Shown: one piece after another, positions 2,952 through 46,600 of the stretch
Layout: every line of letters begins with the position of its first letter
Numbering within the stretch: the first letter of the stretch is position 1
Origin: Mytilus californianus
Taxonomy: Eukaryota
Assembly (NCBI RefSeq): GCF_021869535.1
Contig: NW_026262668.1
Location: 50,158,001 to 50,222,000, forward strand
Reading direction: 5' to 3'
Length of the DNA: 64,000 nt
Translations under genes and position numbers: made by a program
The notes under the pieces: generated by a model
Database searches by the model: none
What the model saw: the letters and a program-made list of their open reading frames with translations, nothing else
Told to the model about the DNA's origin: nothing

Positions 2952-5900
2952 CTAGGCTCGCCGTATCATCATACGTGTCGCCTTCAATGAGCTGTATCCT
3001 TTCCAATGCTTCCAGGTGACACCAATAGTATTAGTACCCTTTAGATACCTCCCGTTAAGATTGGAGGCATAACAACCACTATACCACCATCCTCCCTTAT
3101 ACATTTCAGAACAGTTACCGCCGTAAACATCATTATCTCTATCCCTTGTAGAAAATCTATATCCATTATGAACGCCTAATGAATTCCCTGTGTTAAATAA
3201 AATATTGGCATATAAAAATATTGAAACTATGTATATTTATTGGTGCTTGGAAAATAATGATTTACTATTTTCAATTAAATTTATTATCTTTTTATAACAA
3301 ACCTGCATCGTAATTCCTGTTGAATATTCTGAACTAATAAGTTAGCTACAGGAATACTTGCCGAGCACACTATTTAACTATTTGTTCTATTGTTACTACT
3401 ATTATCTATTGTTTCAATTTGTAAAGATTAGAATAGAAATGTTTCCTAAATGTTAATACCGAAGAAATGAAAAACAAAGAAAGGGCATAGAAGGCCATAA
3501 TATAATTTAGTGATTACAATAAAATAAAAAAAAAAATGTTCAGAGTGTATTGGAACATTTGACAAAATAGTGTTTTAATATTGGGAACGATCATTTTTAA
3601 CTTTCAGGGGGGAGGGTATGGTTTTTTTTTCATTCAAAATCTATTTTTCGTACCACGCAAGCATCATTATACCATATTGTTTTCTTCCAAATTGGAAATC
3701 GGAATATTTTTTTAGGAAATTATCATAACCCAGTAACGATTCTAATGGAAACTACACAAGATTCGGGGTCATTATCATGATTTTGTTGACAATTCATTTG
3801 TCCCTAGCGCAACCAAAGAGAAGCAGGTTATCGCAGTCTTAAATCTTAAGATATCAGTATTGTCGTTTAAATTGTAAATTTACAGATTGCGTCCCTGTTT
3901 CCTATCTTTCCATTTGGTCGTAGTTTGGATTTGAATGACAAAAACCTTACAATTTACAGCAACGAATTACCTTAACGTTTTGTGTCGTTAATTAGATTTA
4001 TATTATCTTATAAGGTTTTAATTGATGTAGTGTATATTCTATTTCAATTATCATGAATCTACATTACCTGCATTTCCAGTGTAACCAGCTACTTCCAGCT
4101 TGTACCCTGACCTTTCGTTCTTAACAACAAAAGTGTTGTAGATGGCATATCGGTGGTTATTTTCAAAGTCCCACATGTCTATTCGCAATATGTAATATCC
4201 CTGTTCTGTCAGTTTGCTCAAATACTCATTCCCTATAGTTAAAATTGCACAATTTATTGCCACATTGCAATAATAAAAAGTTTTGATATGTGTCAGTTAA
4301 ACGTTTTATGAAGAAATGCATGTACTTCATCAATTACTAGTAACAACATCACAATAGTGTGAATAAATCACCTACATCTCCTTTTTACTTATATCTTAAG
4401 AATCAGTAAGGTACTGTTAGAAGTGTAAGAAGCACAGAATATTAAAACCTTTCGAAACACTAAGATTTTTACCTCCAAAGGCATGAATAACATTATCAGT
4501 ATTCGGCGCAATATTTTGTACATTTATGGTTTCAATTATGTTTTAAGGTCGTAACTGATTTGACTTTCCAATTTTTGTTTAAATTTAGCGCCACTAATGA
4601 GTTTCGTGTTGACGAAAGCGCGTCTGGGGTACTAAAATATGAGCTTGGAATCTTTAATGAGGATTTAGATTTGTTTTAAATTGTAATTGAAAAAAATATA
4701 AATATATTATATTTTAATTTATCTCTGTCAAATAAGCCGACAATTAGATAAACAAACCTTACCTAACCAGAAATCTCCTTCAAAATTCCCAAAGCCATTT
4801 TTATACGACTCCCAGTCTCTGTAAAAGCCAACAAAACCATTGGTTCTTCGTTGGAATAACTGTGGAAGACAATTCCTTTTAGATATCATTTCAGCGATGA
4901 ATGAAATTTGACTTCGTTACATGCATCTCTATTAATCAGGGGATACTTTCTATATCTCTTGTTTGTTCTTTAATAAATTATGTTATTACTATCATATCTC
5001 AAAACAGCATATCATACTCGTAGTGCGTTTGTGTTGATAGTATTATATGTTATTTATAGAGCTCCTTTTACGAATTAACGTATGAAATGCACGGAAAGCG
5101 TTGTTGTTAGTCATACCGATAAAATGAAATTAAATGCTTTTTCTGAAATAATTTTGATTTTGATTTTTCTTTGTTTAATTTATTATTCCATTTGTCGAAA
5201 TTGAAAAAAAGAGGATTGGGTTCTTAAAACAAAACAAAAAATCTTGTCCTTAACCATCCTCGTCATTGGATGTCTTTGTTCATATAATTGTGTTGTGTTT
5301 TCCTTTCAATAAGTAGGTGTTTGTGACAGGATCTTAAGCAGTTCTTTATTGATAAGGTTGCTGTCTTCTTGAAGTTTCTCTCTTTCTTCATATTAGCACG
5401 GTTCTGTTGCATTGTTCTTGCATATCAAAAGGGATTACGGTATCGTACATTTGTACTTGTGGACTCTTTATTTTACGTTTTCCTCTTTTTAACAAACATA
5501 AAACTATGATAGTTTATAGTTTATCTGAATTTATTACATAAACTAATCAAAATGTTTTCAATTTTTAAACGGCATTTCTAAAACGGCACAACTTTCAGTA
5601 AATATCATATATACGAACCGTCCAACCACCTCCAAAACTCTTCATATCACAAAAGACATTGAAACCGGAAGTTCCGTCCGGATAAATTTTATAGACTCCA
5701 CTTTTGTTTTCTGATTTTCTCATTTCACCACAGTCGGAAGGTCGGGCGCCTAAACCTTTATAGGATATAAAAATAAAGAATAAAGATGATATGACTCTCA
5801 AACATGTTCTATTTTATCTATTTTATAATTAAGAAACTTAAGGTTCTAATACAGTCTGGCAAAGATGACCTGAGATGAATTTGGCTATTCGGTTTAGGTC

Positions 5901-6708
5901 ATTTTTTGTGCCTGGCTATCACATATTAAGGTTTGAGGGTGCCTGATGAAGGTTACTCCAGAAAATCCTTCGAACGCCTAGATGTATAATGTGTTTATTT
6001 TATTTCAAAATGATAAGTGCTTTCTTTTTAACAGCCTGCCAAAACTGAATATTTAAAAAGATATATTTTTGGTAGACGAAGAAAATTGTTGCATCCATAA
6101 ACTTTGATCTATCTTATTGGATAAAACTTATAGTTCCATCTACAATCTAATTTATTTTTGTTAAAGTTTGAAAGAACCAACTCAAATAACATGTAAACGA
6201 TTTTTTTAATTGTAGCACATTACCTTTGGAAGGGGACGCGATGCATTGACTCGTAGTTTCTGTGATAAGATTAGCCACTTGGTCGGCTACTTCCCTGACA
6301 CATTTCTCTACAATAAATATTTGAAGACATCTTATTCTAATTTCAATCATTAAAACTATTGAAAACAGATATGTTAAATATGAACTCGAACAGTTCAAAC
6401 AAAATCGATGTAACAAAATATTGTCGTAGCAGAAATTTGTAATTCAAATTGTCATAGAAGAAAATGTTTTCAACGTGGTCTTTTATAAACGCGTGATGAT
6501 TTATTGCAACATTATATACCTATATGGAATTATAGCTTGGTACTTGATTTAAATTTTGTTTTCTCGGTCAATGTGTTCATTGATTTCAAATTAATTTGTT
6601 CATCAAATCAAACATAATATTGTGCATTTTCCTACCTTTGTTTATTTCCTTGCCATAGCTTTGTACAAAAACGAGAAGAAAGGCAGTTAACAGCAATTCC
6701 ATATGCAT
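2952..6708 (-). CDS. Gene A: intact secreted fibrinogen-related domain protein (FReD/ficolin-like), 6 coding exons, 263 aa
   Basis: Hand-spliced exons (minus): E1 6636-6708, E2 6224-6307, E3 5619-5755, E4 4763-4859, E5 4068-4232, E6 2952-3187. All introns are GT..AG and the total of 792 nt is in frame. Protein: [19 protein letters not shown] signal, [21 protein letters not shown], then FReD motifs [69 protein letters not shown]. Confidence 0.92.
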
Positions 6709-7694
6709 TGTATTCCGAATGTGACTTGAAACAAAACAAATGAATATGTTTCCTTACTGCTAGTATTTTGACTACATATGCTGCCACATAAATATACGTA
6801 TAGACTTTTACAAATGTTGTTGCGTGTTATATGTAATATGAGAGGCATTATTTCCTGATCATTTAATCGACTTAATTCTGTTATTCCCAAAACAGGTTCT
6901 GCATTCTTAAAAGTTCTAATACGTACCAAATGTCATTGACTGTACATAGGATTAGTTTAATTCTATACATGTACCAATGAAAAAGGAGGATTTTGGAAAT
7001 GAAAATTCTGGCGTGTAAAGAACTGGAAACAAAATAACCTTCGACAAGACTGGTTGTAAAATATATATTCTGCACAACAAAGTGTAAGGAATGAATGAGC
7101 ACAAAAGTGAAAAAGTTAGCGGGATTAACTTGTTACTTAAAAAAAAGTACTTTTTCTTTTCCTTTATTTACCCGTTACACAAGTACACGATTTGCCATTA
7201 ACGTTAGCATTCTTAGTCCAAACATACGCTTAAACACTGACTTCATAATATCGAAAACATTTTAAAACAAAATAAAAGGATAGCCGTTGGAAATTTGTTC
7301 ATTCACAAGTTCTTAAATGTTTATTTTAAAGCTTTAAATCTGGTATGCTCTAGTGTATAGGCCAATATATTTTGGTAATTTCTGTTTTCCTTTTTATGTA
7401 TTATTTAAATTGTGTCATTTATAACAAATAAGATGCGTCTAAAATTGTATAATTTGTGTTTCTGTAAAAAAAAACATAGTTGCAAAACCGTTTTATAAAC
7501 CAAGAGGACGATGCTCGAAAGATATAAAGCTAACGGAACCAGACAGGTTAAAGGACAAATACAAACATATATACATGTAAACGAAAATATTAAAAGAACA
7601 AAGAGGTCATTTACATTTTCGTTATTTGGTCTCTGATGTAAAGTTGTCTCATTGACAATCATATCCCGTCTCCCTTTTTATAAGGAAACCTCAC

Positions 7695-7790
7695 GTTATT
7701 TCTTATTCATATACCACAGGCAAACATAATTGGTTTTTGACAATGGACAAGCAACCAAAACCATAAGACATGCTATCAATGTTGATTCCA
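7695..7790 (-). other. Putative non-coding first exon (E0) of gene A
   Basis: Block conserved upstream of A, B (from 12967), D (from 38891) and E (from 53161), ending in a GTGAG donor on the minus strand. E1 is preceded by an AG acceptor 16 nt before the ATG. The 5' boundary is approximate. Confidence 0.5.
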
Positions 7791-8685
7791 AAAAAAATAA
7801 ATTTAATGGACGAAAAGATAGGCATGTAGAGACAGCTACAAAGAACGATACAATTAACGACCTTTGAAATATTAAAAACTCATCTTAAAGGCTTATAATT
7901 TTGTACGTCAAACTCGTGTTTCATCTACTCAAGGCTCAGTGACGCTCGGATCAAATACATGTTTATTTAAAATAAACTGCTATATCATATGTTTTAGTAA
8001 GAATCTGAAATGAAAATAGTAAATACTCGGTTTTCCGTGCGGTCAGATAAGGATAATGTATAAATGAAAGGTGATATCGCAAAAAATATCAGCGCCAGAT
8101 CAAACATAATTTAGATTTAAACAACACACCTAAATGCAGAAGAACACAAAAAGCGCAAAAAACTTAGGATAAGCTAGAATCGAAGATCTGGTATTGTTAC
8201 ATAATTTTACAGCATACGACTTTTTTTATAAGAATTTGACTATCTAGTATTCAATGACATATTCATAAGTCTAAACCCTTATATTTATGACTTTACCAAA
8301 CATTTGGCACATACGAGCGAATTCTAGCACCTTCCTCTTTTACGTGCATATATTTCTGAAAAAATATGATGATGAAGTTGTTTATGTATAGATGATGCAT
8401 CAGTTTTGCATTTAGTCTATATAATAGGGATAATTAGTTTAATAAAAATCTTGGGACGAATCGATTTTTATTTAGATTTTTTTTCTTTATTGAAATAACG
8501 TAAATATTCCAGTATTTAAACTCCCCCAAAAAACCGAGGAAAAACAGACAATACCAGCGTATGGATTTTCTACCTAGGAATAGATTACCTTAGCTGTATT
8601 TTGCAAAACCTTTCGGAACTTTGTGCCCTCAATGCTCTTCAACTTCGTACTTTAATTGGCTTTTTTTAATTTTGTGATTCGACGA

Positions 8686-9530: not shown

Positions 9531-11059
9531 CAAAAATAAAACCCAGGTAGCTATGATATTACACAACCACTGACGCGGTTCCTGGCGCGGTTCAGGCTGA
9601 ATATTAGTATGTACTATCGTTGATACTCCTTCCCTTACTTACTAATTTTAAGTTGGACGTGCAATGTCAGCAATATTTTAGTTCACTTTATTATAAGGTT
9701 GGGGTAAACAACGGATTAAGCTCTTACATTTCGAGGAAGTTGCAATACAATCTATACTACTGAAACATCGAGGTCCAATTTGATAGCCGGCATGACGCAA
9801 AAACGACGAATCAAAGAATTCAACTTGATGTATAACTAATACAGGACAATGGTGTTGATTAAAATTACACCATTCCAGGCCCTTTCGTTTTCTACATAAT
9901 AAATATTACCAATAATTAACAAGCTCCGGTCGAATCTGATACCGATACCAATAGTATTATTACATGTAGTTTCCAGTTTTAGTAAGAAAACCAGGACGGG
10001 TTCAAACGGAAAGATTTTGAAAGCAAAGACAACTGTGCACCTTATAATTAGTATGACTTTATCAGATGACAATACGAATACTAATAATCCAGGCTTAAAA
10101 CAAGGTGTAGGTACTTTAATTCAGTCATTGACCCGCGATGTCGCGGGTGTGTTCTAGTAACATTTAAAGGTACCACATTAAATTTTCCAGATACGCATTT
10201 TGAAAATCGATGTCTCCTTAGTGATGCTCAAGGTAATGGACTCAATGCTCAAGGAGCCTGTTGTTTAGTGGTTGTCGTTTGTCGGTGTGGTCATAAGTGT
10301 TTCTCGTTTCTCGTTTTGTATATAGATTAGACCGTTGGTTTTCCTGTTTGAATTGTTTTACACTAGTCATTTTGGGGCCTTTTATAGCTTACTGTCTGAT
10401 GTGAGCCAAGGCTCCGTGTTGAAGGCCGTACTTTGACCTATAATGATTAACTTTTTACACATTGTGACTTGGATTGAAAGTTGTCTCATTGGCACTCAAA
10501 CCACATCTTCTTATTTATAATCAATCCTGTGTGTCCAAAAATTAAGGCATTATATAATGCTAGAAATGGTTAATCCACGTTAATAGAACATACACAGATA
10601 TTTATTTTGGACTATATAGTTTTAGTACGTGTTGTGTACAAGACTGTATGTGAACGAATCTTGAATTGACTTTGCAGTGGTAGCGTATAAAAAACACAGG
10701 TTAATCAATAAGGGAAATCAGACATCAAAAGAGGACAAAAACAAACAGCGAGATAAATGAAAAATGTACACAAAATAAAAAAAACCATAGGAGATGGAAA
10801 ATATTTATAACAAAAGATTTGGACAATACGTTCTCCAAACGAAAAGGTTTGTAATTAGATGATCAATACAAATGAACTGCAGCATTCAAATTAACTGTTA
10901 AAGGTCAAGTTCGAAGTAAATTGAAAAACTTTGAAACACAAGTATGTATTACAAAAGAATAAGACAACCCCTGTGTGAAGCTTTATTTTTTTTAGAGAAT
11001 AAAGTACATTTTAGTGCAAAACTGAAATCAGGGTATTCATTTTTATTTCTTATTTTTTG

Positions 11060-12889
11060 CTAGGCTCGCCGTATCATAATACGTGTTGCCTTCAATGAGT
11101 TGTTGTATTCCTTGCAATGACTCCAGTTGGCACCAATAGCATGAGCACTGTGTTTTCCCTTTATGTACCTCCCGTTAAGATTTGAGCTATGACACTGATT
11201 ATACCACCATCCTCCTTTATACATCTCTGCACAGTTATGGCGGTAAACATCATTATCTCGATCCCTTGTAGAACATTTATATTCATTATGACTGCCGAAT
11301 GAATCACCTGTATAAAATAAAATATTTAAGTCTTAACTAGTCAGTTGGTGTCTGAAAAATAATTTTCAACTAAATATATTATATATTATCAAACCTGTAC
11401 CGTATTCTAGTCCGAGATTACTCTGACGTTCAACGGCTGTTTTGCCAGACAAGCTGGGGCCGTGGGACGTCAGAGCTCGTCCCATATCAAAAAGTGGATA
11501 TTTGCCCGTCCAAAATAGATGCGCTGCTTCGTCGCTTCTGGTGCCAACGGACGGCCTTGGAATTATATAAATCGGGTATCAATTTGTTCATTTTTCATTT
11601 ATCTCTTCATTTATGTAAGTTTCAACTACCTGCCACCCTTTATTTTCTTGTATTTAGACAGTTTTCACAGTGACCCACCGATTCTGGCATTTTGACTTTC
11701 ATTTTGAAAGATTGTCATGTGATCACGAGAAAAAAGTAAGGCACAATGGACTATGGGAAATGATGTATGCATATGACCCTAGGTCAATAATGAATATATA
11801 ATCTAACACCTCGCTCATTTACGATGCAAGCAATGTAAATATCCGAGAGCTTCCGAATGTTATCGTGGTTGGCACTAAATGCTTAATACCGATCTCCTGT
11901 AAAGGAGGTGAAAAATCGTGGTTGGCTACTAAATGTTTAATATCGATCTCCTATAAAGGACGTGAAAAAAGTATAAATATTTGCATATTTGAGTCTCGAG
12001 GTCGCAAAATCTCGTCCATTTGAAAATAAAAGTAAAAATGTCTGAATCGATGGGTCACTGTGAAAACTGTCTAAATATGAGAAAATAAAGGGTGGTAGGT
12101 AGGTGAAACTTACATAAATGAAGAGATATCCACTTTTTGATATGGGACGAGCTCTGAGAAAACAAAGAAGGTCATTGAAGGCCATAATGTAATTTGGTTA
12201 ATACAATTAAAACATTATGAGTGCAGAGCGAATTGGGACATTTGAAAAAATAGTGTTTTAATATAGGGAATAATCAGGAATAATCATTTAAATTTGGGGT
12301 GGGTGGGGGTATGGTATTTTTTTTCATTTTGAATTTTTTTTTCGTACCACGCAAGCATCTAATTTTTTTGTCGCGCAAATTCTTTTCCTTAGAATTTAAC
12401 ATTAAATTCAATGGTAAATACTCTCAATCCTTTTGGTCGGTCTTTCATTTGGACCAATCCTGACACTCCTTGGTGTATTATAATTCAAGAAAAACCTTAA
12501 AATATGTATTATCTATAACTTATTTCAATTTCAACAAAACAGATATGCTAGATATAACCTCGAATAGTTCAAACAATATCGATGTAGAGATGCAACAAAA
12601 TGTTTTCGTAGAAGAATTTTTTCATTCAAATTATCAGGGAAGAAAATGTTCTAAACGTAGTCTTTTAAAACGTGTGATGATTTTTTGCAACATCATATAC
12701 TTATATGAAATTTACTTGTTACTTGATTGAAAATTATGTTTTCTTGGTCAATGTGTTCATAGATTTGATATTAAATTTGTTCATCACATCAAACATTATA
12801 TTGTTCATTTTCCTACCTTTGTTTATTTCCTTGCCATAGCTTTGTACAAAAACGAGAAGAAAGGCAGTTAACAAAAAATCCGTATGCAT
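11060..12889 (-). CDS. Gene B: internally deleted FReD paralog, two exons (signal peptide + terminal P-subdomain exon), in-frame 106 aa ORF; functional gene or pseudogene unresolved
   Basis: E1 12817-12889 ([29 protein letters not shown] donor) and E6 11060-11307 (TACAG acceptor; [39 protein letters not shown]). No E2-E5 lie between them; the intervening 1.5 kb is a chimera of intron-1-like and intron-5-like sequence. Both junctions are phase 1. Confidence 0.7.
11400..12156. mobile_element. MITE/foldback element in the intron of gene B
   Basis: About 140-bp inverted repeat: 11471-11501 plus 11601-11710 versus 12017-12156 (CAGAGCTCGTCCCATATCAAAAAGTGGATAT...). Internal 53-bp tandem duplication at 11862-11968. 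Absent from the homologous intron of gene E. Confidence 0.7.
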
Positions 12890-14240
12890 CGTATTCCGAT
12901 ATTGACTTCAAACATAAATAATAAATGTGTTTATTACTACTAGTATTTTGACTAAGTAAAACTCACATTATCTTTTATTCATATACCATAGGCAAACATA
13001 GATATCTCAATTTGGCTTTTGACAATGAGCAAGATACCAAAACCATATGACATGCTATAAATTTTGAGACAGTCGATAACGGAGCCGACATGAAATCAAC
13101 AAAAAAATCCTTTAATTGAAAAGAGAAATATATCGAGACAGCAACTAACAACGATATAATTCACAACCTAAAATTTAAAAAACCTCATCTCAAAGGCTTA
13201 TAGTTTTGAACGCCAGACTCTTATTTCATCTACTCAAGACTCATTAGTGACGATCGAATCAAAACACATGTTTATTTAAGAAAAAAACTGATCTATTATA
13301 ATTTTAGTAAGAATCAGAAAATAGATATAGTAAATGCTTGGTTTTCCTTGCAGTCAAATAAGGATATTGTTTGAATAAAAGATGTTATCAAGCAAATATC
13401 TGTACCAGTGTAAACCTTATGTAAAAGAAACACACATCTATATCAACAATAAATCGATGACACATTAATCTATAAAAAAAAACTGAAAAAGATAATTTGC
13501 GTATGAGTACGAAATATTTGGAAAAAAATATAATTTCTTTTATTGAAATGACCGGAATTTCCCAATTTCTATAAAACTCCCTTAAATTCGATTAACGATT
13601 GACACTGATATAATGTCTTATCTAGTATCTTTGATAAGTTGTTGTTGCTTGCATGTACTTCCGATAGTATAATGCATATGTCGAAAATAAAATGATATCA
13701 CTGTACATGTTTCAAATTGACTGACTATCTGTAAGATTTGCAAAATGGAAGGATGGATCACAAAGGAAACCTAAGAACACTCAAAATTAAAAGCTGACAA
13801 AATAACTCAAACATGAACTTGGGAAAGAGAGGCGAAAGATACCAAAGAGACATTCAAACTCATAAGTTGAAAATAAACTGACAACGCCATGGATAAAGAA
13901 GAGAAGACCAACAGACGAACAATAGTACATAAAACACAACATAGAAAACTAAAGACTGAGCAACACGAACCCCACCAAAAACTGGGGGTAATCTCAGGTG
14001 CTCCGGCATTACGACATTTGGAACATATCCGCTATCATCTGTGAAACGGATATTCCATATAGGTCAACCAACTCGTGATGGCGTACGTAAAATTTACGAA
14101 AGGACGATGATTTCAATTTCTGCATTTGTGAATCTTTTTATTTACTTTATAATTTCCCCATCATTTGTATTTATGCTATTATGTTCCTTTTGGTTGTATT
14201 ACTCTTGACGTGACTCGGTATTTGTGAATCCAGCTATTGC

Positions 14241-14242
<2 letters not shown>

Positions 14243-14273
<31 letters not shown>
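14243..14273. repeat. Poly(T)31 tract
   Basis: Direct count of the run. Confidence 0.9.
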
Positions 14274-14278
<5 letters not shown>

Positions 14279-15772
14279 GGTCGTTCCTAGTGCAGGTGCC
14301 ATATAGGAAACAGGATAATGTTTTTTTTATACTTTCTGAGAAGGTAAATAAATTGTGTGTTCCGATTAATGAGATGAAAATTGCCAACTACATCAGGAAC
14401 AACTCTTTCCCAATTTAAATGGCAAATTTATCAAACCTTCATCATAATCAAATGCTTGTACCATTATCCAATGTTTTTGTCGCTAGGAGTACCTGTGATT
14501 TTTCATTGATTGTTTTGATTATCTATGAAATCACATAATAAAACTTGTATAGCATAAGCTTTTCTACTGACATTATGTATGACGATACTCTTTGTTGGCA
14601 AATATTTTAATGTACGTTGCCACAGCTAAAAGATTTCGTTATTGTCCTATACTTTATTATTGTCAATATCATCTTACAACTTTTACCAAATTGAATTCAT
14701 TTAGTTTCTGGACAGAGCTATGCAATTAGATGTAAGCATGAATAAAACGAGATGGGGGATTCGTCAACAATACTGCAATCATAAGCCAAAAATATCCAAA
14801 GTCATCTAGACTGGCGCGGTTAAAGACCGGCACATTAATGTGAGTATAGAAATATACTACATGTTATTCTCTAATGCTTGTTTTATTTACTTGATAAACT
14901 CATCATAGATACCAGGATTAAATTTTTACGCCAGACGAGCGCTTTGTCTATAAAAAGACTCATACAAATATATTTCTACGACCAAAACAAAAACAAACAA
15001 ATCCAACCGTCACGTTTGTCGCTTGCATTTTCTATCTAATGATATAAACAATCATGGAAGTGAAAATTAGAATTCAATGCGTTAATTTTTATTGATTATT
15101 TTTACTAGGCTCGCCGTATCATCATACGTGTTGTTTTCAATGAGTAGTTGTATCCTTTCCAGGTAGACCAATTAACACCAATAGCATAAGTACTGTGTTT
15201 TCCCATGAGGTACATCCCATTCAAGTTGGAGTGATGACAACTCGTATACCACCATCCTCCGTTATACACCTCAGCACAGTTCCTGTTGTAAGCATCATTA
15301 TCTCTGTCCCTTGTAGTAAATTTATATCCATTATGTTGGCTTAATGAATTCCATGTATAAAATAAATGTAAACATTCATATAACTATGTATATTAGTACT
15401 ATATTGAGAGTTTCTAAAAACAAAGGATAAATGTGTTTTTATAAAATGTAAAATCTTTGTAAAATAAATCTGCACCGTTTTACCGTTGAATATTCTGAAC
15501 CGATAAGTTAAGTAATTACAAAAACACTTAAGCACTGTAGTAATTATTTTAAAATTATTTGAAACACACGTAAAAATTGATTTGTAAGCGAACAATGATG
15601 TCATACGTTAAAGTTCATTTCAAAAAGATAGAGAATTTTGACTGTTAAGATTCGATCAAAATGTGCAAACCTAAAATAATGAGAATCCCTCAAACTTAAC
15701 AATTAAAAAAAATACACTCGAAAGGAGACATACTTATAGTATAAAGGTTTTGCATTTATAAGGTTAAATTAA

Positions 15773-31300: not shown

Positions 31301-31861
31301 TGAGAATGTATTTAACACGACTGTATGAGAACAAACCTTAAATAAAGCTTTATATGGTGTACAATCATAGCTAGTATGGAATAACAAGCTGAAAGGTTCC
31401 TGAATTGACAAAATTAGACGTCAAATCAGCCGAAAACAATCAGCGAAGTAAACAAAAATCAATAAAAATCTATATGAACCGGAACAGATTGATAACCACA
31501 AATCTTTACACAAATCGTGCTCCACCCAAATCTGAATACTGTAACCAGGTACTCAAATGCATCGGGATGAATATATCATGGCCCCACAGACTACAACATT
31601 CAAACTACTTTTTAAGTTCAGGCCGATACTAGGTTAAACTCGAAAAAACTTGAAGAACTTCGAAAATCATGTCAGGGACTATAACAAAACAAACGAATCT
31701 GTGTGTAAAGCTTGCATTTTTTTTTCGGACGATGTAAGCCATCTTTCAAGTGAAAAATTTAAATTAAAGTATTAATTTTTATTGATTATTTTTTTCTAGG
31801 TTCGACGTATCATCATACGTGTCGCCTTCAATGAACTGTATCCTTTCCAATGCTTCCAGCT

Positions 31862-34800
31862 GGATTTCTGTTTATTTATTTGTTATTTTTATGATATTGA
31901 AGTATATAAATAGATATATAACTATTTTCGATTGTTAGATGTAATATTTTCTACAACCGTTCTAGATTAACGGAGAAAAAAATAAAAAGGCAAGTAAAAA
32001 TGATGAATTGAGTGAACCTTGCCTCGAATTTGTTTAATTCTCGTAAAATTGTGCATGTTGTACGGAAAGAACGGTACGGAAAGAAAGATGTTAACATGGA
32101 GATTGCAAGACTAGTCATGTGAGCACCTCAATATTTGTATTTCTGTGCATGGAACGAAAGTAATAGGTCATGTCAAAATGGAAGGACCCTGTTTTGTCAA
32201 TTTTGTTTACTACATAATGACCCGGTTTTGTTTTTGTATAGCTCCCGGTTTTGTTTCGTTTTGAAACCACAAAATTATTAAACGCGACGTTAACACGGAT
32301 CCGAAAAGTGTCCGTCGAAAAAAAAATCAATACTAGTAAATAAGTTATTGTAAAACAAACCTGTCTTGTTAAAATTTATCTTAAACGGGCACTTTTCGAA
32401 ATAGTGAGTACATATTTTTTGAATGCAAAATCTATACCTTATTGCACTTATCTTTATACCATGCACGTACATTAAATATTTTATAACATTATGATTTTTG
32501 TTTGTTTACAATACTAGTATGTAATGATGTAAAAATAAGAAGTTGTGGTAGGATTGTGTTACCTTATGAATTTATTAAAAGAGTAAAGCTAGTATGTTTT
32601 ACTATACCAGTCAGGATTCTACTTCTTCAAAATTATCTCCCCATTACGCCAGCTATTTTTTACAATCGTAAAAATGGAAGCCATTGTAGGGATGACGCGC
32701 TGCCAATTTAGCTCTTGAATACCGATACATTTATCCACATAGCACACTTACGATCCTTACATGCCAGTTTTATTTTAAAATTCAAATGTATCTATAAGCT
32801 ACTGAGCATCATTTAATGTAATTTTCTGCATTAAGTCAACTTAAAACTATTGTCTGATCGGTTGTTTTTTTGAGGTTATGCATTTTTAAGATCCACTTGT
32901 AAAGTCTGTCGTCAGGTACTTTTAGTAAAAATTTATTATTCGAACACACCTACTCTGTTCTTATGACTCATTAGAAAGGTATTTCACTTGACCCATTTAT
33001 TTAATGTTACTAAATCAACCTGTATCCTAAATATATAAAAATAATAAAATCTGAAGCGAGATGATGTATCAAAGTTTTTTTGCTTGATACGTTTTCAAGA
33101 CAGATTAGTCAACTCAGACACGGACGAACATAAAAAGGTGCACTCGACTTTCTCTTTTCGATGAAATTATTGCCCATTTGTAGGATTTTCTCCCAAAAAA
33201 CTGTCGCCGGGGCACAGATGCAAGTTAATGCTTTAAAAGACCAATCTATTATCTTTGTGTAGAATTTTTCGGCGGAATTTATGCTTATGCACAAAAAAGA
33301 TCCACTTGTATTTGTATCTACCACAATCGACTGTTTTATGAAAAATTGTCTATAATTTAAAAGTTTACAAACATCTCGAAGCTCCATACTATAATTTAAG
33401 TAAAGACACGTATATAAGATTCATATAATCCTAAATTATGCACTTTTATTAAACTTTTAAAGTTCTTTTGTTTAATTTCAACTGGGTATCCGCCTGCTAT
33501 ACTATACGCTTTGTCTACAATATTTACTATCATTTACTCATTTATTCATTCATTGAAAAAAGACTTTAGTCTATCATATTCTGTACGAATTAATCATGCA
33601 TGCAACCTTGCCAAATTTTCTGGTACTATATATATAATACTGTGTAACTCGTATTGTACGACTTTGCCCCCAGCAGAGCTATAGAAAAACCGTGCAATAA
33701 GTGTGTTACACGGACACTTTTTTGAAGTAAGACGGACACTTTTTCTGAATAGATTAACTCGTGCATCTATTGAGTTCATAGGCAGTTTTTCGTTCACCTT
33801 GTGACAATATTACCTGTTATATGAAAAGTGTTCGTAAAGATTATATTTCTATCTCTAATCAAAAACATCGCACAAGTCACATAAAAAACATAAGTTACAA
33901 AAGAAACGTGGTGGTAACAACCAGCCGTATAGTTTTTTCTGCACTCGTAGTCAGGTCAAAGTCCTCGGATGTCGCCTCGGACATTGACCTGACTACTCGT
34001 GCAGAAAAACTATACGGCAACGTTTGTTACCAGCCTATTTTTTGTTACCTTTGTTTTGTATCAAATACCTAACGCGAGTTTTCACACTTGAGCACGCACA
34101 TAACATAGCTGTGGGATTTTCAACTTTCCACCTATTTTCAGGTAAGCACATTTGATTTTATCGGCCTTTTAACGCATGTTTTCCATATCATATTCACAGT
34201 TCAAGTTCCAAGGAAACTTCAAGTTAACATTTGAAATAATTATGTATTTTCCATATCATATCTTTAGAGCTTTTAAACCAACATAAGATTGTGGAAAGTT
34301 TGGTTAAATTTGGCACAGTAATTTCAGAGGAGAAGATTTTTGTAAAAATTAACGCACGACGACGGACGACGAAGGCCAGGTGATGAGAAAAGCTCACTTT
34401 GCCCTTTGGGTCAGGTGAGCTATAAGCCCACTAAGAATTCCAAACAAGATTGCATCGTTCTTAAATTAAAACAAAGGTCTAACAATTCATAATTGAGTCG
34501 CACACAGACGGGAAAAACTAATCAGACAAATAAAAAAATAAAATTATTTTTGTTGCAATTAAGCAGTAATTCAAGTGTTTACGGATTCAAATAAATGATA
34601 AGTTGTCTTCTAAAAGAAATCCGTTTCCAACGAACCATCAAACTCCGTTTGAATGCCGGAGTTTAATTTACGTTATGCGATTATGCATTATTTTCTATGA
34701 CAAAACCGGGTCCTGCTTTGTTAATTTTCAGGACGAAACCGGGTCGTACACATTGACAAAACCAGGTTCTTCCATTTTGACATGACCCATTTCCTTCGTT

Positions 34801-35093: not shown

Positions 35094-35618
35094 TACATTT
35101 TTTTCTGTCTGTTGATGGTCCGTCACCGTACCGGATACTAGATACCATTGAGTCCAACATTTTTGTCAGGGTAGTTTAGACACAGTGAACATGTATTATT
35201 ATATATTATTTCAATTTGTAAAGACTAGAATAGGAATACTGCTTAAATGTTAATACTGAAGAAATTAAAAACAAAGAAGGGTCTTGAAGGCCATAATATA
35301 ATTTGGTCATTACAATTAATAAAATGCGAGTTCAGAGCGAATTGGAACATTTGACAAAATAGTGTTTTAATATTGGGAACGATCATTTAACTTTCAGGGG
35401 GAGAGTATGGTTTTTTTTTCATTCTGAATATTTTTTCGTACCACGCAAGCATAAATATGCCATATTGTTTTCTTCAAAATTGTGAATCGGGTGGTTTTTT
35501 TTTATAGGAAAATATCATAACCCATTAACGATTCTAATCGAAACTACACAGGTTTCGGGGTCACCATCACGATTTTGTTGACCATTCAATTGGCTCTATC
35601 TCAACCAAAGAGAAGCAG

Positions 35619-36163: not shown

Positions 36164-37113
36164 TCATTCTATTTGGTCTTAGTTGGATTTGAATGGCAAC
36201 AATCTACAGTTTACAGCAACGAATTACCTTAACGGTTTGTGTTGTTAATTGGATTTATATTATTCTATAAGGTTTTAATTATTATAGTATTAAATATTCT
36301 ATTTCAATTATTAAGAATTTCATTACCTGCATTTCCAGTGTAACCAGCTACTTCCAGCTTGTACCCTGACCTTTCGTTCTTAACAACAAATAAAGGCAAC
36401 AGTAGTATATCTCTGTTCAATAGTCATAAATCGATTAAACGAAAACAAATCCGGGTCACAAAGCAAAACCGAGGGAAACACATCAACTATAAGAGGAAAA
36501 CAACGGAACAACAGAAATACTGAACTGCTACAAAAACAAACGCCAACATACATAGAAACGCACTATTTGATAACAGCTGCCATATTCCTGACTTGGTACA
36601 GGACATCTTAAGAAAAAATGGTGGGTTGAACCTGGTTTTTATGGCTAGCCAATTTTCGAACCTCCCGCAAAAGTGTTGTAGATGGCAAAATGAATTATTT
36701 CCTTTACTTTTTTGCCCGTTACACGAGTACACAATTCGCCAATAACGTTATCATTCTTAGTCCAAACATACGCTTTAACCTTGACTTTATAATATCAGAA
36801 AAACATTTTAAAACATAATAAAAGGATAGCCCTTGGAAATTTGTCTTTTCACAAGATTTTTAATGTGTATATTGAAGCCTTTAATCTGGTATGATCTGGT
36901 TTATAGGCCAATATGTTTTGGTAATTTCTGTTTTCCTTTTTATGTATTTTTTAAATTGTGTCATTTATAAATAATAATTGTCTAAAATTATGCAATTTGT
37001 GTCTCTATAAAAAAAAATATAATTGCAAAACAGTTTTATAAACCAAGAGGACGATGCTCGAAAGATATAAAGCAAACGGAACCAGACAGATAAACGAACA
37101 AATACAAACAGAT

Positions 37114-38750: not shown

Positions 38751-39107
38751 ACAAAAACAAACAGATATACGTGTAAACGAAAATGTTCAAAGAACAAAGA
38801 AGTTATTTACATTTTCGTTATTTGGTATCTGGTGGAGAGTTGTCTCATTAACAATCATACCCCGTCTTCCTTTTTATAAGTAAACCTCACATTATCTTTT
38901 ATTCATATACCGCAGGCAAACATTCATATCTAATTTTTTATGACAATGGGCAAGCAACCAAAACCATATGACATGCTATAAATGTTGACTCCAAAAAAAT
39001 TACTTTAATGGACGAAAAGATAAGCATGTAGAGACAGCAACAAACAACGATACAATTAACGACCTTTGAAATATTAAAAGCTCATCTCAAAGGCTTATAA
39101 CTTTGTA

Positions 39108-39150
39108 CGCCAGACTCGTGCTTCATCTACTCAAGATTCATCAGTGACGT
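39108..39150 (-). ncRNA. Degenerate minimal hammerhead ribozyme motif upstream of E0 of gene D
   Basis: Minus strand ACGTCA-CTGATGA-ATC(TTGAGTA)GAT-GAAG-C(ACGA)G-TC-TGGCGT; GAAA is changed to GAAG. Paralogous copies lie near 7905-7950, 13207-13252 and 53400-53433. Confidence 0.55.
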
Positions 39151-41402
39151 TCGAATCAAATACATATTTATTTAGGATAAAAGAGAGGCGAAGGATACCA
39201 TAAATTGCTATATCAAATGTTTTAGTAAGAATCAGAAATAATTAATATTCAGTTTTCCGTGCGGTCAAATAAGGATAATGTATGAATGAAAGGTGATATC
39301 GCAAAAATATTAGCGCCAGATCAAACATAATGATGTTGATGCAAGAATCCAAGATCTGTTATTGTTACATCGTTTTACAGCATATGACTCTTTTTATAAG
39401 AATTTGACTATGCAGTATTCAATGAAATAAACTTCACCCTAAGATTTATGACTTTACCAAAAATTCTAGCACCTTCCTCATTTACGTGCATATATTTCAG
39501 AAAAAAAAAATGCTGAAGTTGCACTTAATCTATAGAATAGGGATAAATTATTTGCTAATAAATCTTAGAACGATCGATTTTTATTTAGTTTTTCTTTTTT
39601 TTTTCAAATAACGTAAAGTTCCCTTTTTTAATGCCCCCTTATATTCAATAAACGGTTGGCAAACATATAATAGTGGTTCATCTTAAACTGACCTTATCAT
39701 AAATTTTAACATCAATGCACAAGATTGTATATTCCCGTTGATGTATGAAGTAAGAGGACAATAGTTAACCGATGTTCAAATCTCTTAGATCGATAAGGAA
39801 AGAGAAAAAAATGTTGGTATGGTCAAGACGTTTGGTTAAGTAAGCATATGTTCAAGAGAGTTATCTCTCCTTAACCAGTTATTGGGTTTTGTGTAGTCCG
39901 TATTTGGTTGATATATTAGTTTTACAGTTGATTGTTCTATGGATTAATTGTGACCATGCATGTACATGCGTTTGAGAAATAGAACTTCATTAGCAAGACA
40001 GAATCTAAAATTGTTTACCAATTTTTGCATTATGGGCGAGCACTATTGCAGATAAAAAAAGACAAGACCTTCACATATTTAATTCAAAATACTTGTGTCG
40101 AAATAGTCGGTCGACTCCTTATACGAGTTTAATATTTTAATGTCAAGTTTTACCCATTTTTGTGATTTAAATAAAAACAATAATAGTTGACAGAGAGACT
40201 TTATAAAATATAATTGTCTGCAACACAAGATTTAAACATGAATTATACTCTAGTATATACTGTTGGAGAGTTACCATTGTTGAAGATGCACATTGATCAA
40301 GATGAGCAACACAGATTCTTTAGAGCCTCTATTTTATTGCATGTTTGATGTACATGTTGATAGTCCACTGATGGAAATTAAAATGAATACGAATGTGATT
40401 TCTAAAAAATAAATTAACCCCTAAATGTACCTTTTTCATGTCCTTGCCTCAAGTCAGGAACCTTGGCATAAATTATCTTTTTCAAATATCCGATGTTTGT
40501 CTCATGTTACATTTTAATCGGTTGTTTTATATCATATCTCAATGGTTTTTCATGGAATTTTTTTAGGAGATAATTTTGATGTTTTTAGGCCACACACTCT
40601 GCACATGAAAGTCATGTGGCCTGTTGCATGACAAAATATGTATCCCTATTCAACATGTCCTCATTTTCTGGTGGCAATACAAATTAATCTTTAATTACTC
40701 GATCCACTCAATTTCTAGTTTTAATTTTTTTTCGTCTTCATTATGCATGGACTGTTTGCCACTAGACGTGAACCTAAAACAGAGCAACCAATCAATAATT
40801 GTTTTAAGGAATATGTTGTGCAAATATCAGCTATTTAGGGGGGTTTTGTTTAAGTAATTCTCAAGTGTTTGAGTCTGTGGGCGATTTAGGGATTGAATGT
40901 TGAAAAGACACCTGTTTCTTGTTATAAAAAAAGAATTGTATGATGGCCTCAAAATGTATATTGGTTATGTCGTCTTTAACTGGACCATTGATGAATACTA
41001 CAAATTATCAATTCATGTCATAAGCTTGGAAAAGTTGTTTATAGACGAAATCATATGATTCATTTATTTCTCGTAAGAAAATAACAGCTTCCTCAAAATG
41101 TAGAATAACCGATTCAAATGCAACTTGCCTTTTGACGCGTCAAAATGAAAATAGATTTACTTTAAAAATCAAGTTTATACACACAAAGAGGCTGACGTTA
41201 CAAAGGGAACAATAAACAAAAACACAAGTCGAGGAAAAAAGACAATACCATCGCAAGGATTTTACTACCCCAGGAATAGATTTCCTTAGCTGTATTTGTT
41301 AAAATCTTTCGGAGTTTTAGGCCTTCAATACTCTTCAACTCCGTACTTTATTTGGCTTTTTTTTTACTTTTTTTATTCTAGAGTCATTAATGAGTCCTTA
41401 CA

Positions 41403-43604: not shown

Positions 43605-46600
43605 CTAGGCTCGCCGTATCATCATACGTGTTGCCTTCAATGAGTAGTAGTATCCCTTCCAATGATTCCAGTTGACACCAATAGCATGAGTACTGTGTTT
43701 TCCCTTTAGGTACATCCCGTTAAGATTGGATTTATGACAGTTATTATACCACCATCCTCCTTTATACATCTCAGCACAGTTATAAGGGTAAACATCATTA
43801 TCTCTATCCCTTGTAGAAAACCTATATCCATTATGACCGCCGAATGAATTACCTGTATGAAATACATTTTTTTAGTCTTAACTAGTCAGTTAGTGTCTGA
43901 AAAATAAGGATTTACTATTTATCTACTATTGTTATTATAATCATATTAAAGATTACAATATGTAAACATAGAAATGTTGTTTAAATGGTAATACCAAAGA
44001 AATTAAAAAACAAAGATGAGGCTTGAAGGCAATAACGTAATTTGGTCAATAAAATTTAAAAAAAAACATGTGAGTGCAGAGCGAATTGTACCATTTGAGA
44101 AAATAGTGTTTTAACATGTAAAGATCATTTAAACTTGAGGAGGGTGGGGTTAATTGTTTTCTTTTATCATTCTCGTTTTATCATTTTCGTACTACGCAAT
44201 CATCAAATTATTTATTTTTTGTCACACCAATTTTTTTTCTTAGAACTTAACATTTAATTTAATGGGAAATACTCAAACATGCTGTTTTCCCTCTCCATGA
44301 TCAAAGTTGTGACTACGTTTTAAGAAAAAACCATAACATCCCCCCTCGTCGGATTAAATGATCATTTCCTTAGCTTACTTGTTTGAAGCTACCACTGTGG
44401 CCTTAACATATCGCAGTTGATATGCTACGTTCATGCATACATTATACGGACTTCATTTACATGGTAGTGCTCCTTACGCAAAACTTCTTCAGCAGGGTTC
44501 TGAAAAAACTATTCTACACAGGTTTCGGAGTTACCATCATAATTTTGATAACCATCCATGTGGCTCTGTCTCAACTCATGAGAAACAGGGTTTCGAAGTC
44601 TTAAATCTTAAGATACCAGAAAAGTCTAAAGTGAAAATTTACAAATTGTGTCCTATTCCTTATCTTCCATTTCGTCTAAGTTTACATTTGAATGGCGGGA
44701 ATCTTACAATTAAAGGTAAAGATTTACATTAATGTTGACGAAAAGATACAATTTATTATTAAACAATAACCGTTAGAGTATATGGAAAGTAGGTAAGCAT
44801 CTTACTATTACCTATATTGTAATTATCATACCTATTTTTCAATGACACCAAAACAGTATTGCAATTGTATAATCCGATTTTAGTCTTTGGGATACAAACT
44901 GGTTAAAACAATAGTCTTCTAATTAGTCTTGATTTATTGTTATCAAGACGTTGAAATAAAACTCTTTTATAAGAATAAAAGTTGATGTCGGATAAAAATC
45001 AATTTGACAAAATCTATACAATCTAGACAAAAAAATATATATATACATTCAAAGACAATAATAAACCTAATTACGCAACGATAATCGAAAACGGACTGTC
45101 AGCACTGTCGTCAAAACAAATATTTGGAAAAATACTTATAGTATTCGAAACATTAGAGTGGCAAAAGAGATGCAAAAGATACCAAAGGGACATTCAAACT
45201 CATAAGTCGAAAATAAACTGACAACACCATGGCTAAAAAACCAACTCGTGATGGCGTCCGTAAAATTTACGAAGGGATATTTCAATCTCACAACTTCCTT
45301 GTGAGCAGCCACCCTCTTTATCAAGGAAATCATCATAGGAAATACAAGCCCAGGAATATCATATCAACCGGGAGATATATACTTCGTATGCACGCGCTGC
45401 AAGAATGTTGCTACATAGAAATGGAAACTTCATAATATGGAAACTGTAATCACCTTTTTTTGTCGTAAACTTTTGTTTTCAACCGTTCAACCGACCTGCT
45501 TTATCAATTTCTAGATGTAAGTCAAGATATGTGGCAGACTTAACTGTATTTGTTGTATCTTTTATTTCAAGTTCGATGGAATAGCTGCGTTCAACATAGT
45601 CACCAAATTTTGAATTATTTAGTGAGAAAACATCACCTATATGACGTAGAGTATTATATATAAATTAATAATAATTAGATTTATGGTATCTATAATATTG
45701 TAATTGTTATATTATTCTATTCAATTATCATGAATTATATTACCTGCAGTTCCAGTGTAACCAGTTACCTCCAGCTTGTACCCTGACTTTTCGTTCTTAA
45801 CAACAAAATTGTTGTAGATGGCATATCGGTGGTTATTTTCAAAGTCCCACATATCTATCCGCAATATGTAATATCCCTGTTCTGTCAGTTTGTTCAAATA
45901 TTCATTCCCTATATATAGTAATAGTTGCCCAATTTACAATAACAAAAAGTGTTGATATATTTCAATTAAAATATTGATGAACACATACATGTACTTCACC
46001 AAATGAACAACATTGCAAGAATATGAAATAACCAGCTACATCTCCTTTTTACTCATATCATAAGAAACTATACTGTGCTGTTAAAGTCGTAAGAAGCAAA
46101 GAATATTAAAACCTTTCGAAGCATTAAGATTTTTACCCTAAAAGCATTGTTGACATGAGCAATATTCGGAGCAACTTTTTTGGACATTTTTGGTTAGATA
46201 AAAACTTTGATGAGATTTTAGATTTGTATTTAATTGTATTTAAAAACAATTAGGCAGAACAATAATATATTAATCAACCTTACCCAACCAGAAATCTTCT
46301 TTTAAATTCCCAAAGCCATTTTTATACGACTCCCAGTCTCTGTAAAAGCCAACAAAACCATTGGTTCTTCGTTGGAATAACTGTGGAAGAAAATGCCATT
46401 AAGATATCATTTCAGAGATGAATGAAATTTGACTTCGTTACATGTATCTTTATTAATCAGGGTATACTTTCTATACCTGTTGTTTGTTCTTCAATACATT
46501 ATGTTATTAGTATTATATCTCAAAACAGCATATCATACCCGTAGTTCGTTTGTGCTGATATTATTATATGTTAATTATATAGCACTCCTTTTACGAATTA

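What the first reader, a model, noticed from the sequence alone, without database searches (positions are those of the whole stretch)
11060..12889. A two-exon 'mini-FReD': signal peptide fused in frame to the ligand-binding P-subdomain only, with two new cysteines
Seen: B lacks E2-E5, yet keeps the E1 ATG, the signal peptide, the GTAGG donor, the E6 CAG acceptor, the stop and an AATAAA. Both junctions are phase 1, so splicing gives a 106-aa ORF (about 87 aa mature). Established: the last FReD exon encodes the P-subdomain with the Ca2+ loop (DRDND) and the Cys-His ligand site. Seen: relative to its paralog E, exon 6 has 19 amino-acid-changing codons but only 3 purely synonymous ones, no stop or frameshift, and two otherwise invariant aromatics become Cys (FST>CST, WKG>CKE). 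Inference: either a decaying pseudogene or a new small secreted lectin/antimicrobial-like peptide, possibly stabilised by an extra disulfide. I do not know of a described stand-alone P-domain protein.
Basis: partly seen in the sequence, partly recalled or inferred. Interest (0 to 1): 0.82.

Follow-up and report, generated by a model that had tools for sequence, protein, structure and literature searches.

The report
Truncated fibrinogen-lectin gene remnant, likely dead
One copy in a tandem row of invertebrate fibrinogen-type lectin genes has lost its four middle exons and most of its promoter, and although the two remaining exons still join in frame, everything testable says it is an ordinary decaying gene remnant, not a new mini-lectin.

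Summary
Copy B (minus strand, 12889-11060) keeps only exon 1 and exon 6 of a six-exon FReD gene. Both junctions are phase 1, and the join gives a 106-aa open frame with F>C and W>C changes.

The interpretation as a new secreted mini-lectin is not supported.
- The in-frame join is automatic: four of the five introns, including 1 and 5, are phase 1.
- On the B branch, exon 6 shows 12 replacement and 3 silent changes. That equals the neutral expectation (3.3:1), is spread evenly over codon positions, and accrues at about the non-coding rate. B-E dN/dS is 0.97, against 0.33-0.54 for the other paralog pairs.
- A second deletion removed the upstream block conserved in A, C and E beyond about -70.
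- A high-copy foldback element sits in the merged intron.
- B has the lowest Pfam score of the five exon-6 peptides.
- RNA contigs that show spliced paralog transcripts hold no B-specific exon 1 or exon 6 sequence, and no 12817/11307 joint was seen.
- The open frame has a roughly 4-13% chance under pure drift, so it is weak evidence.

Independent DNA runs cross the intron-1 breakpoint, so it is not an assembly collapse. The array also holds another decayed copy.

The parts
12817..12889 (-). Exon 1 of copy B: ATG, signal-peptide-like N-terminus ([24 protein letters not shown]), phase-1 donor G|GTAGG
   Evidence: There are three private replacements (M3T, E4D, L5F) relative to A/E. The 3' 46 nt are identical to paralogs.
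11060..11307 (-). Exon 6 of copy B: C-terminal third of the FReD (Pfam PF00147 positions 142-219 of 221), with the DRDND loop, the conserved Cys pair (C25, C38-His39) and stop TAG at 11062-11060
11042..11047 (-). AATAAA poly(A) signal-like hexamer just after the stop
   Evidence: read from the sequence, use not shown
11308..12816 (-). Merged intron. 11308-11362 and 12159-12423 are homologous to paralog E intron 5. 12536-12816 is homologous to E intron 1. 12424-12535 is poorly alignable filler at the deletion joint.
11470..12157 (.). Foldback/MITE-like repeat inserted in the merged intron: 32-nt perfect terminal inverted repeats plus 110-nt inner arms (91%). It is absent at the homologous site of E and is high-copy in the genome.
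   Evidence: word depth in the DNA run X3 is several thousand to about 69,000 over the bins covering the element, against about 45-60 for unique sequence
12890..12954 (-). The only upstream sequence still shared with A, C and E (about 65-70 bp before the ATG)
12953..13443 (-). Sequence homologous to the far-upstream intergenic block of A (7681-8135) and E (53140-53575), here abutting the promoter stub. This marks a second deletion of about 0.9 kb (relative to A) that removed the promoter-proximal block conserved in A, C and E.

Best explanation
Copy B is an unprocessed, deletion-derived remnant of a six-exon secreted FReD lectin gene, sister to paralog E, in a birth-and-death tandem array. One deletion ran from intron 1 to intron 5 and removed exons 2-5, that is the short linker and the A and B subdomains of the FReD. 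It spans roughly 3.1-3.6 kb measured on E.

A second deletion removed the promoter-proximal block beyond about -70. A high-copy foldback element then landed in the merged intron.

Introns 1 and 5 are both phase 1, so any such deletion leaves E1 and E6 in frame. The 106-aa frame is therefore a by-product and not a design.

Since then exon 6 has drifted neutrally, and the two new cysteines are two of these drift changes. Most likely the locus is not transcribed, or only trivially, and makes no functional protein.

Shown: the anatomy, both deletions, the substitution pattern, and the absence of B-specific RNA in the two libraries laid. Inferred: the lack of function.
For: Anatomy:
- Only E1 and E6 are present.
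- Homology to E is confined to E6 plus the 3' flank, pieces of intron 5, the start of intron 1, E1 and 65 bp upstream.

Intron phases: 1, 1, 0, 1, 1 in paralog E.

Substitutions:
- B-E dN 0.115, dS 0.118, ratio 0.97. Other paralog pairs give 0.33-0.54.
- Polarised with A, C and F, the B branch has 12 replacement and 3 silent changes, at codon positions 6/5/4. The E branch has 5 and 2.
- The neutral expectation is 3.3:1.
- The B-branch rate in exon 6 is 0.062 per site against 0.071 in flanking non-coding DNA. The E branch gives 0.029 against 0.059.
- Seven private replacements fall at positions identical in the other four paralogs; sister E has none.

Pfam scores of exon-6 peptides: F 104.7, E 96.8, C 95.3, A 80.9, B 77.3 bits.

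Promoter: A/E share 94% identity over about 260 bp upstream, and C is still alignable to about -240. B breaks off at about -70 and jumps to the homolog of A 7681-8135.

RNA:
- X1 contigs show E1-E2 and E5-E6 spliced paralog transcripts at word depth 125 and 54.
- X1 has depth 0 on B exon 6 and on the B-specific 5' part of exon 1.
- The raw RNA run X6 has depth 0 on both B exons.
- No 12817/11307 joint was seen.

Context:
- The array holds another decayed copy, D.
- Truncated FBG-domain genes are common in expanded FREP families (PMC1242226).
Against: - The remaining frame has no stop or frameshift. Under pure drift this has roughly a 4-13% chance: P(no stop) 0.36-0.43 times P(no indel) 0.10-0.32.
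- The splice sites, ATG, signal-peptide hydrophobic core, Ca2+ loop, conserved Cys pair and poly(A) hexamer are all intact.
- The substitution test has little power. 12 of 15 replacements is only marginally more than expected at the family's usual constraint (one-sided p = 0.059), and the B-versus-E relative-rate test gives p = 0.13.
- The RNA evidence is thin. Only 6% of X6 was read and the neighbouring gene C was silent there too. X1 is a small contig set whose tissue is unknown.
- A TATA-like AT-rich motif happens to lie about 85-97 bp upstream of the B ATG, so transcription cannot be excluded.
Confidence: 0.8

Rival explanations
1. B is a young functional gene. It is transcribed from the retained 70-bp stub plus new upstream sequence, spliced E1-E6, and secreted as an about 87-aa peptide that keeps the Ca2+ loop and acetyl-group pocket. 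The two new cysteines form an extra disulfide that compensates for the lost A/B subdomains.
For: Open 106-aa frame, with intact splice sites, signal-peptide core, DRDND loop, Cys-His site and poly(A) hexamer. The chance of an intact frame under drift is only about 4-13%. Several private changes replace large hydrophobics with smaller or polar residues (F>C, W>C, V>A; Y69N is B-branch but not scored private because A has a gap there). That could suit a surface newly exposed to solvent.
Against: dN/dS is about 1, with an even spread over codon positions and a non-coding-like rate. The conserved promoter block is lost. No B-specific RNA is present where paralogs are expressed. No stand-alone signal-peptide-plus-P-subdomain protein was found among short relatives; the nine sequences read out of the 13 hits are last-exon ORF fragments. 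Every solved relative carries the whole FReD. No confident fold is predicted for the fragment, although the control fragment from intact E is equally poor.
Confidence: 0.1
2. B exon 6 serves as an alternative terminal exon of the upstream gene C. C's own exon-6 acceptor reads AT instead of AG in this haplotype. C exon 5 (phase 1) would splice to the B exon-6 acceptor (phase 1), giving a full-length FReD with a different P subdomain.
For: C has an intact 267-aa frame, but its exon-6 acceptor is ...ATACAT|GG. The phases are compatible. B exon 6 lies 3.8 kb downstream of C exon 6 on the same strand.
Against: RNA depth is zero on B exon 6 in both RNA sets. B exon 6 evolves neutrally. Such a transcript would have to read through C's poly(A) site. 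There is no joint or loose end at 11307 in the rows shown.
Confidence: 0.03
3. Assembly artefact: a full-length gene was collapsed, and exons 2-5 exist in the real genome.
For: Repeat-rich, paralog-rich region with a high-copy element inside the interval.
Against: Contigs of two other DNA data sets from different studies cross the intron-1 side breakpoint at 12536: X5 12490-12805 with 1 mismatch, and X3 12527-12835. Unique-level word depth (about 45-60 in X3) covers B exon 6, exon 1 and the flanks. The B-specific divergence of the flanks, the promoter deletion and the element insertion are coherent with a real, old locus. No single record spans the whole 1.8 kb, so this is not a complete proof.
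Confidence: 0.03

Closest known systems
Fibrinogen-related domain lectins (Pfam PF00147; ficolins, tachylectin-5A, FIBCD1, molluscan FREPs/FReD proteins)
   Same: Exon 6 matches profile positions 142-219 of 221 (77 bits). The best solved relative is ficolin-2, residues 137-216 of 217, followed by tachylectin-5A, ficolin-1 and FIBCD1. The DRDND Ca2+ loop, the Cys pair and Cys-His are present. The full paralogs A, C and E in the same array are ordinary 263-267-aa secreted single-FReD proteins.
   Different: B lacks profile positions 1-141 (A and B subdomains). It has lost the otherwise invariant Phe of the FST motif and carries six more private replacements. All solved chains that matched carry a complete domain.
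Truncated FBG-domain genes and pseudogenes in expanded invertebrate FREP families
   Same: PMC1242226 reports that 24-25 of 53 Anopheles gambiae FREP genes have 5'- or 3'-truncated FBG domains of 30-160 aa, clustered on chromosomes. The present array likewise mixes intact copies (A, E), a copy with a damaged acceptor (C) and fragments (B, D).
   Different: That paper notes that part of its truncations are misannotations. Here the truncation is a verified genomic deletion with mapped breakpoints. The remnant happens to keep a signal-peptide exon in frame.
Unprocessed (duplicated, deletion-type) pseudogenes in tandem immune-gene arrays
   Same: Loss of internal exons and promoter sequence, a transposable-element insertion, neutral substitution pattern, and no detected transcript.
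   Different: No stop or frameshift has yet accumulated in the 106 remaining codons.

Membership tests
FReD / Fibrinogen_C (PF00147) lectin | Complete domain of about 220 aa with A, B and P subdomains | tested here: not met
   Only profile positions 142-219/221 are matched. tblastn with the paralog E protein finds no E2-E5 in B.
FReD / Fibrinogen_C (PF00147) lectin | Ca2+-binding D-x-D-N-D loop and conserved P-subdomain Cys pair followed by His | tested here: met
   D15 R16 D17 N18 D19, C25 and C38 are invariant in the 17-sequence alignment and present in B; H39 is present.
FReD / Fibrinogen_C (PF00147) lectin | Family-conserved core residues kept (purifying selection) | tested here: not met
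   F11C hits a position otherwise invariant in 17 sequences. There are seven private replacements at paralog-invariant positions, dN/dS is 0.97, and B has the lowest Pfam score of five paralogs.
FReD / Fibrinogen_C (PF00147) lectin | N-terminal secretion signal | not tested
   A hydrophobic core [10 protein letters not shown] is kept. No signal-peptide predictor was available.
Unprocessed pseudogene | Loss of essential coding or regulatory parts relative to functional paralogs | tested here: met
   Exons 2-5 are deleted. The upstream block conserved in A, C and E is deleted beyond about -70.
Unprocessed pseudogene | Neutral evolution of the remaining coding sequence | tested here: met
   12 replacement and 3 silent changes on the B branch, against a neutral 3.3:1. 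The rate is 0.062 against 0.071 in non-coding DNA. Power is low: p = 0.059 against a ratio of 0.4.
Unprocessed pseudogene | Disabling stop or frameshift in the remaining frame | tested here: not met
   The 321-nt frame is open and exon 6 has no indel against E.
Unprocessed pseudogene | No, or only aberrant, transcription | tested here: inconclusive
   Depth is 0 on the B exons in X6 (6% of the run read; neighbour C also silent). Depth is 0 in X1 contigs, where paralog transcripts are present. Tissues are unknown and only two libraries were laid.
Small secreted cysteine-stabilised peptide (AMP or mini-lectin-like) | Expressed, conserved, and the cysteines positioned to pair | tested here: inconclusive
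   No RNA support and no conservation signal. The models of the fragment have pLDDT 42 (B) and 41 (E control), so no Cys-Cys distance can be trusted.

The most novel reading that the evidence does not exclude
The remnant is expressed in some tissue or condition not sampled here. It would then yield a secreted peptide of about 87 aa made only of the FReD ligand-binding end, stabilised by a new C11-C64 disulfide. That would be a naturally occurring minimal acetyl-group or Ca2+ binding module, or a decoy for the full-length lectins of the array.
Probability: 0.07. Interest if true: 0.6.

Novelty: already known. Interest (0 to 1): 0.14.

Why it matters
As it stands it matters little. It is a clear, well-mapped example of gene death inside a fast-turning tandem array of invertebrate immune lectins. 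It also shows how phase-1 symmetric introns make internal deletions look like designed mini-genes.

It is a useful caution for annotation. An open frame with a signal peptide and good splice sites is not evidence of a gene when the intron phases guarantee the frame. A raw count of 19 replacement against 3 silent codons is what neutrality predicts.

Only if B-specific spliced RNA or peptide were found would it become interesting, as a stand-alone FReD ligand-binding fragment.

Tried and rejected
1. Word-index protein search with the exon-6 peptide. It gave no near-identical hit, so the mini-protein is not in that collection. The nine of the 13 short hits whose sequences I read (62% identity or less) are last-exon ORF fragments without a signal-peptide exon. 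This gives no support for a stand-alone family, but also no proof of absence.

2. AlphaFold2 of the B exon-6 peptide (pLDDT 42.4) and, as control, of the intact paralog E's exon-6 peptide with the same alignment (40.7). Both are poor, so the models say nothing about B's mutations or the Cys-Cys distance. The tool returns no coordinates anyway. No fold search was run on such models.

3. RNA reads. The only raw RNA run was sampled at 6% and shows no FReD expression at all in the stretch laid, including the C exon-6 control. It is therefore a weak negative. The X1 contig touching 12817-12862 is E1 joined to E2-like letters, and that part of E1 is identical in A, B and E, so it cannot be credited to B.

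5. Pfam on ORF fragments inside E intron 5 (45139-45664), which I suspected to be transposon-derived: no family.

6. Search for repeats at both deletion breakpoints in E that could have mediated the deletion: nothing convincing. The 112-bp filler at 12424-12535 has only weak, partly non-collinear matches.

7. The costly exhaustive protein search was not used. Its top hits would be full-length FReDs and would not bear on the question.

8. Organism identity was not established, because run names are coded. The composition (32% GC) and the FReD array suggest an invertebrate, possibly a bivalve mollusc, but this is inference only.

Full report
**Setting.** The window is AT-rich (about 32% GC) and carries a tandem array of fibrinogen-related-domain (FReD) genes, all on the minus strand. 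tblastn with the exon peptides and with the reconstructed paralog E protein places the following copies:
- gene A (E1 6708 to E6 2952);
- copy B (E1 12889-12817 and E6 11307-11060 only);
- gene C (E1 23253 to E6 15105);
- a decayed remnant D (an E5 piece at 36390-36322 and an E6 piece at 31862-31786);
- gene E (E1 48278-48206, E2 47846-47763, E3 47281-47145, E4 46380-46284, E5 45908-45744, E6 43852-43605);
- gene F (E3-E6 at 62536-56671; its 5' end was not found in the window).

A, C and E translate to intact 263-267-aa proteins made of a signal peptide, a short linker and one FReD. Their exons 3-6 each match Pfam PF00147 in order.

**Check of the observation.**
- the ATG at 12889;
- a 73-nt exon 1 ending G|GTAGG;
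- a 248-nt exon 6 after ...TATACAG|;
- TAG at 11062-11060 and AATAAA at 11047-11042;
- a 321-nt, 106-aa joined frame.

B differs from E in 19 of 81 exon-6 residues, with three codons changed only silently, and has no stop or indel. FST>CST and WKG>CKE are private to B. The Phe is otherwise invariant in a 17-sequence alignment.

**How B arose.** blastn of the B locus against the window shows homology to E in four blocks only:
- exon 6 with the 3' flank and 55 bp of intron 5 (10521-11362);
- a further piece of intron 5 (12159-12423);
- the first 280 bp of intron 1 with exon 1 and 65 bp upstream (12536-12954);
- nothing in between.

About 3.1-3.6 kb of E, containing exons 2-5, has no counterpart in B. 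Between the intron-5 pieces B carries a 688-bp foldback element (11470-12157) with 32-nt perfect terminal inverted repeats and 110-nt inner arms. It is absent from E. The DNA run X3 shows word depths from several thousand to about 69,000 over the bins covering it, so it is a high-copy transposable element.

A second deletion lies upstream. A and E share 94% identity for about 260 bp before the ATG, and even the more distant C aligns to about -240. B leaves this alignment at about -70 and continues with the homolog of A 7681-8135 and E 53140-53575. So B has lost the promoter-proximal block that is conserved in the three intact genes.

**Why the frame is open.** In paralog E the intron phases are 1, 1, 0, 1, 1. 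Any deletion with one end in intron 1 and the other in intron 5 leaves exon 1 and exon 6 in frame with usable splice sites. The in-frame fusion needs no selection to explain it.

What needs explaining is only that 81 codons have stayed free of stops and indels. Simulation gives P(no stop) = 0.36-0.43 for 15-19 substitutions. The indel density of the B-E non-coding alignment gives P(no indel) = 0.10, or 0.32 if coding sequence is half as indel-prone. The joint chance is roughly 4-13%. That is unremarkable for one remnant picked out because it looked intact.

**Selection.**
- Nei-Gojobori dN/dS between B and E exon 6 is 0.97 (0.115/0.118). The other nine paralog pairs give 0.33-0.75, and the pairs without B give 0.33-0.50.
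- Polarising each B-E difference with A, C and F puts 12 replacement and 3 silent changes on the B branch, falling on codon positions 1/2/3 as 6/5/4. The E branch gets 5 and 2.
- Random mutation of this exon is expected to give 3.3 replacements per silent change.
- The B-branch substitution rate in exon 6 (0.062 per site) is close to that of the flanking introns and intergenic DNA (0.071). The E-branch rate in exon 6 (0.029) is half its non-coding rate (0.059).
- B has seven private replacements at positions identical in the other four paralogs (G8E, F11C, L48I, V59A, W64C, G66E, M76I). Its sister E has none.
- B's exon-6 peptide has the lowest Pfam score of the five: 77.3 bits against 80.9-104.7, and 19.5 bits below E, without any indel.

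The power of these tests is limited by 81 codons. The replacement excess over the family's usual constraint is p = 0.059, and the relative-rate test is p = 0.13. Still, every measure points the same way and none indicates constraint or positive selection. Both new cysteines are single-base changes (TTT>TGT, TGG>TGC) within this drift.

**Transcription.** One call was available.
- In the raw RNA run X6 (about 6% of the run read) depth is 0 on both B exons. It is also 0 on exon 6 of the neighbouring gene C, so the library says little.
- The contig set X1 is more telling. It contains a contig in which the 3' 46 nt of exon 1 (12817-12862, identical in A, B and E) continue into letters that are the reverse complement of the start of exon 2 of the paralogs. 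It also contains a contig joining an E5-like end to an E6 start at 15352. X1 is therefore spliced RNA of this gene family, at word depths of 125 and 54.
- Even so, X1 has depth 0 on all of B exon 6 and on the B-specific 5' part of exon 1.
- No 12817/11307 joint appears in any run.

This is absence of evidence from two libraries of unknown tissue, not proof of silence.

**Assembly.** Contigs from two other DNA data sets of different studies cross the intron-1-side breakpoint: X5 12490-12805 with one mismatch, and X3 12527-12835. Unique-level depth covers B's exons and flanks. Together with the coherent divergence of B's flanks, this makes an assembly collapse very unlikely, although no single record spans the whole interval.

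**Structure and relatives.**
- The exon-6 peptide aligns to the last 80 residues of ficolin-2, tachylectin-5A, ficolin-1 and FIBCD1. Every solved chain that matched carries a whole FReD.
- From my recollection of the fibrinogen gamma-C structure literature (not checked here), the final strand of the domain belongs to the central sheet of the B subdomain and the P subdomain packs on it. If so, exon 6 is not a self-contained folding unit.
- AlphaFold2 gave no confident model for the B fragment (pLDDT 42.4). The same fragment of intact paralog E, run as a control, was equally poor (40.7). The result reflects the fragment and the shallow alignment and cannot judge the proposed disulfide.
- The word-index search found no near-identical protein. 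It returned 13 short relatives, and the nine whose sequences I read are last-exon ORF fragments.
- In the literature, truncated FBG domains are frequent in expanded FREP families: 24-25 of 53 genes in Anopheles gambiae, some of them misannotations (PMC1242226).

**Verdict.** The reading as a new mini-lectin is not supported. The best explanation (about 0.8) is a deletion-derived, promoter-damaged, neutrally drifting gene remnant whose open frame follows from intron phases and youth. A functional secreted fragment remains possible (about 0.07-0.1) and would need junction-spanning RNA, conservation or peptide evidence.

The scan's index holds one note on this stretch, which is the same first-reader finding. 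It also holds notes on other FReD architectures on other pieces of this genome that I did not test.

Noticed in passing
window 15350-15356 (minus strand): Gene C has an intact 267-aa frame, but the acceptor before its exon 6 reads ...TATACAT|GGAATTC (AT instead of AG) in this haplotype. An RNA contig in X1 starts an exon 6 exactly at 15352 with one mismatch in 44 nt, so it may come from another allele or paralog. C may be splice-defective here.
   Followed up: partly
window 31786-31862 and 36322-36390 (minus strand): Remnant D holds only a 3' piece of exon 6 and a piece of exon 5 of a FReD gene, 4.5 kb apart, with intron-5-like sequence at 35268-35452. It is a second, more decayed copy in the same array.
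   Followed up: partly
window 2952-6708 versus 43605-48278: Identity between genes A and E is mosaic. Exons 1-5 are 90-97% identical and the first about 260 bp upstream 94%, but exon 6 only 82%, with two in-frame deletions in A. This suggests gene conversion over the 5' part, faster diversification of the ligand-binding exon, or both.
   Followed up: no
window 13655-14245 and 14837-15033: Extremely high-copy repeats between B and C. Word depth reaches 2.4 million in DNA run X3, with many internal joints and loose ends. They are also present in the RNA runs on both strands, and a T31 run lies at 14243-14273. No Rfam family matches.
   Followed up: partly
window 45139-45664 (minus strand): Open reading fragments of 61 and 75 aa lie inside intron 5 of gene E and look like transposon debris. 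They have no Pfam match.
   Followed up: partly
window 7681-8135, 12953-13443, 38877-39308, 53140-53575: A 450-490-bp intergenic block recurs once per array unit, upstream of each gene (72-82% identity). It is useful as a marker of the duplication unit. In B it abuts the promoter stub.
   Followed up: partly
An Rfam scan of this window at gathering threshold found no RNA family at all.
   Followed up: yes
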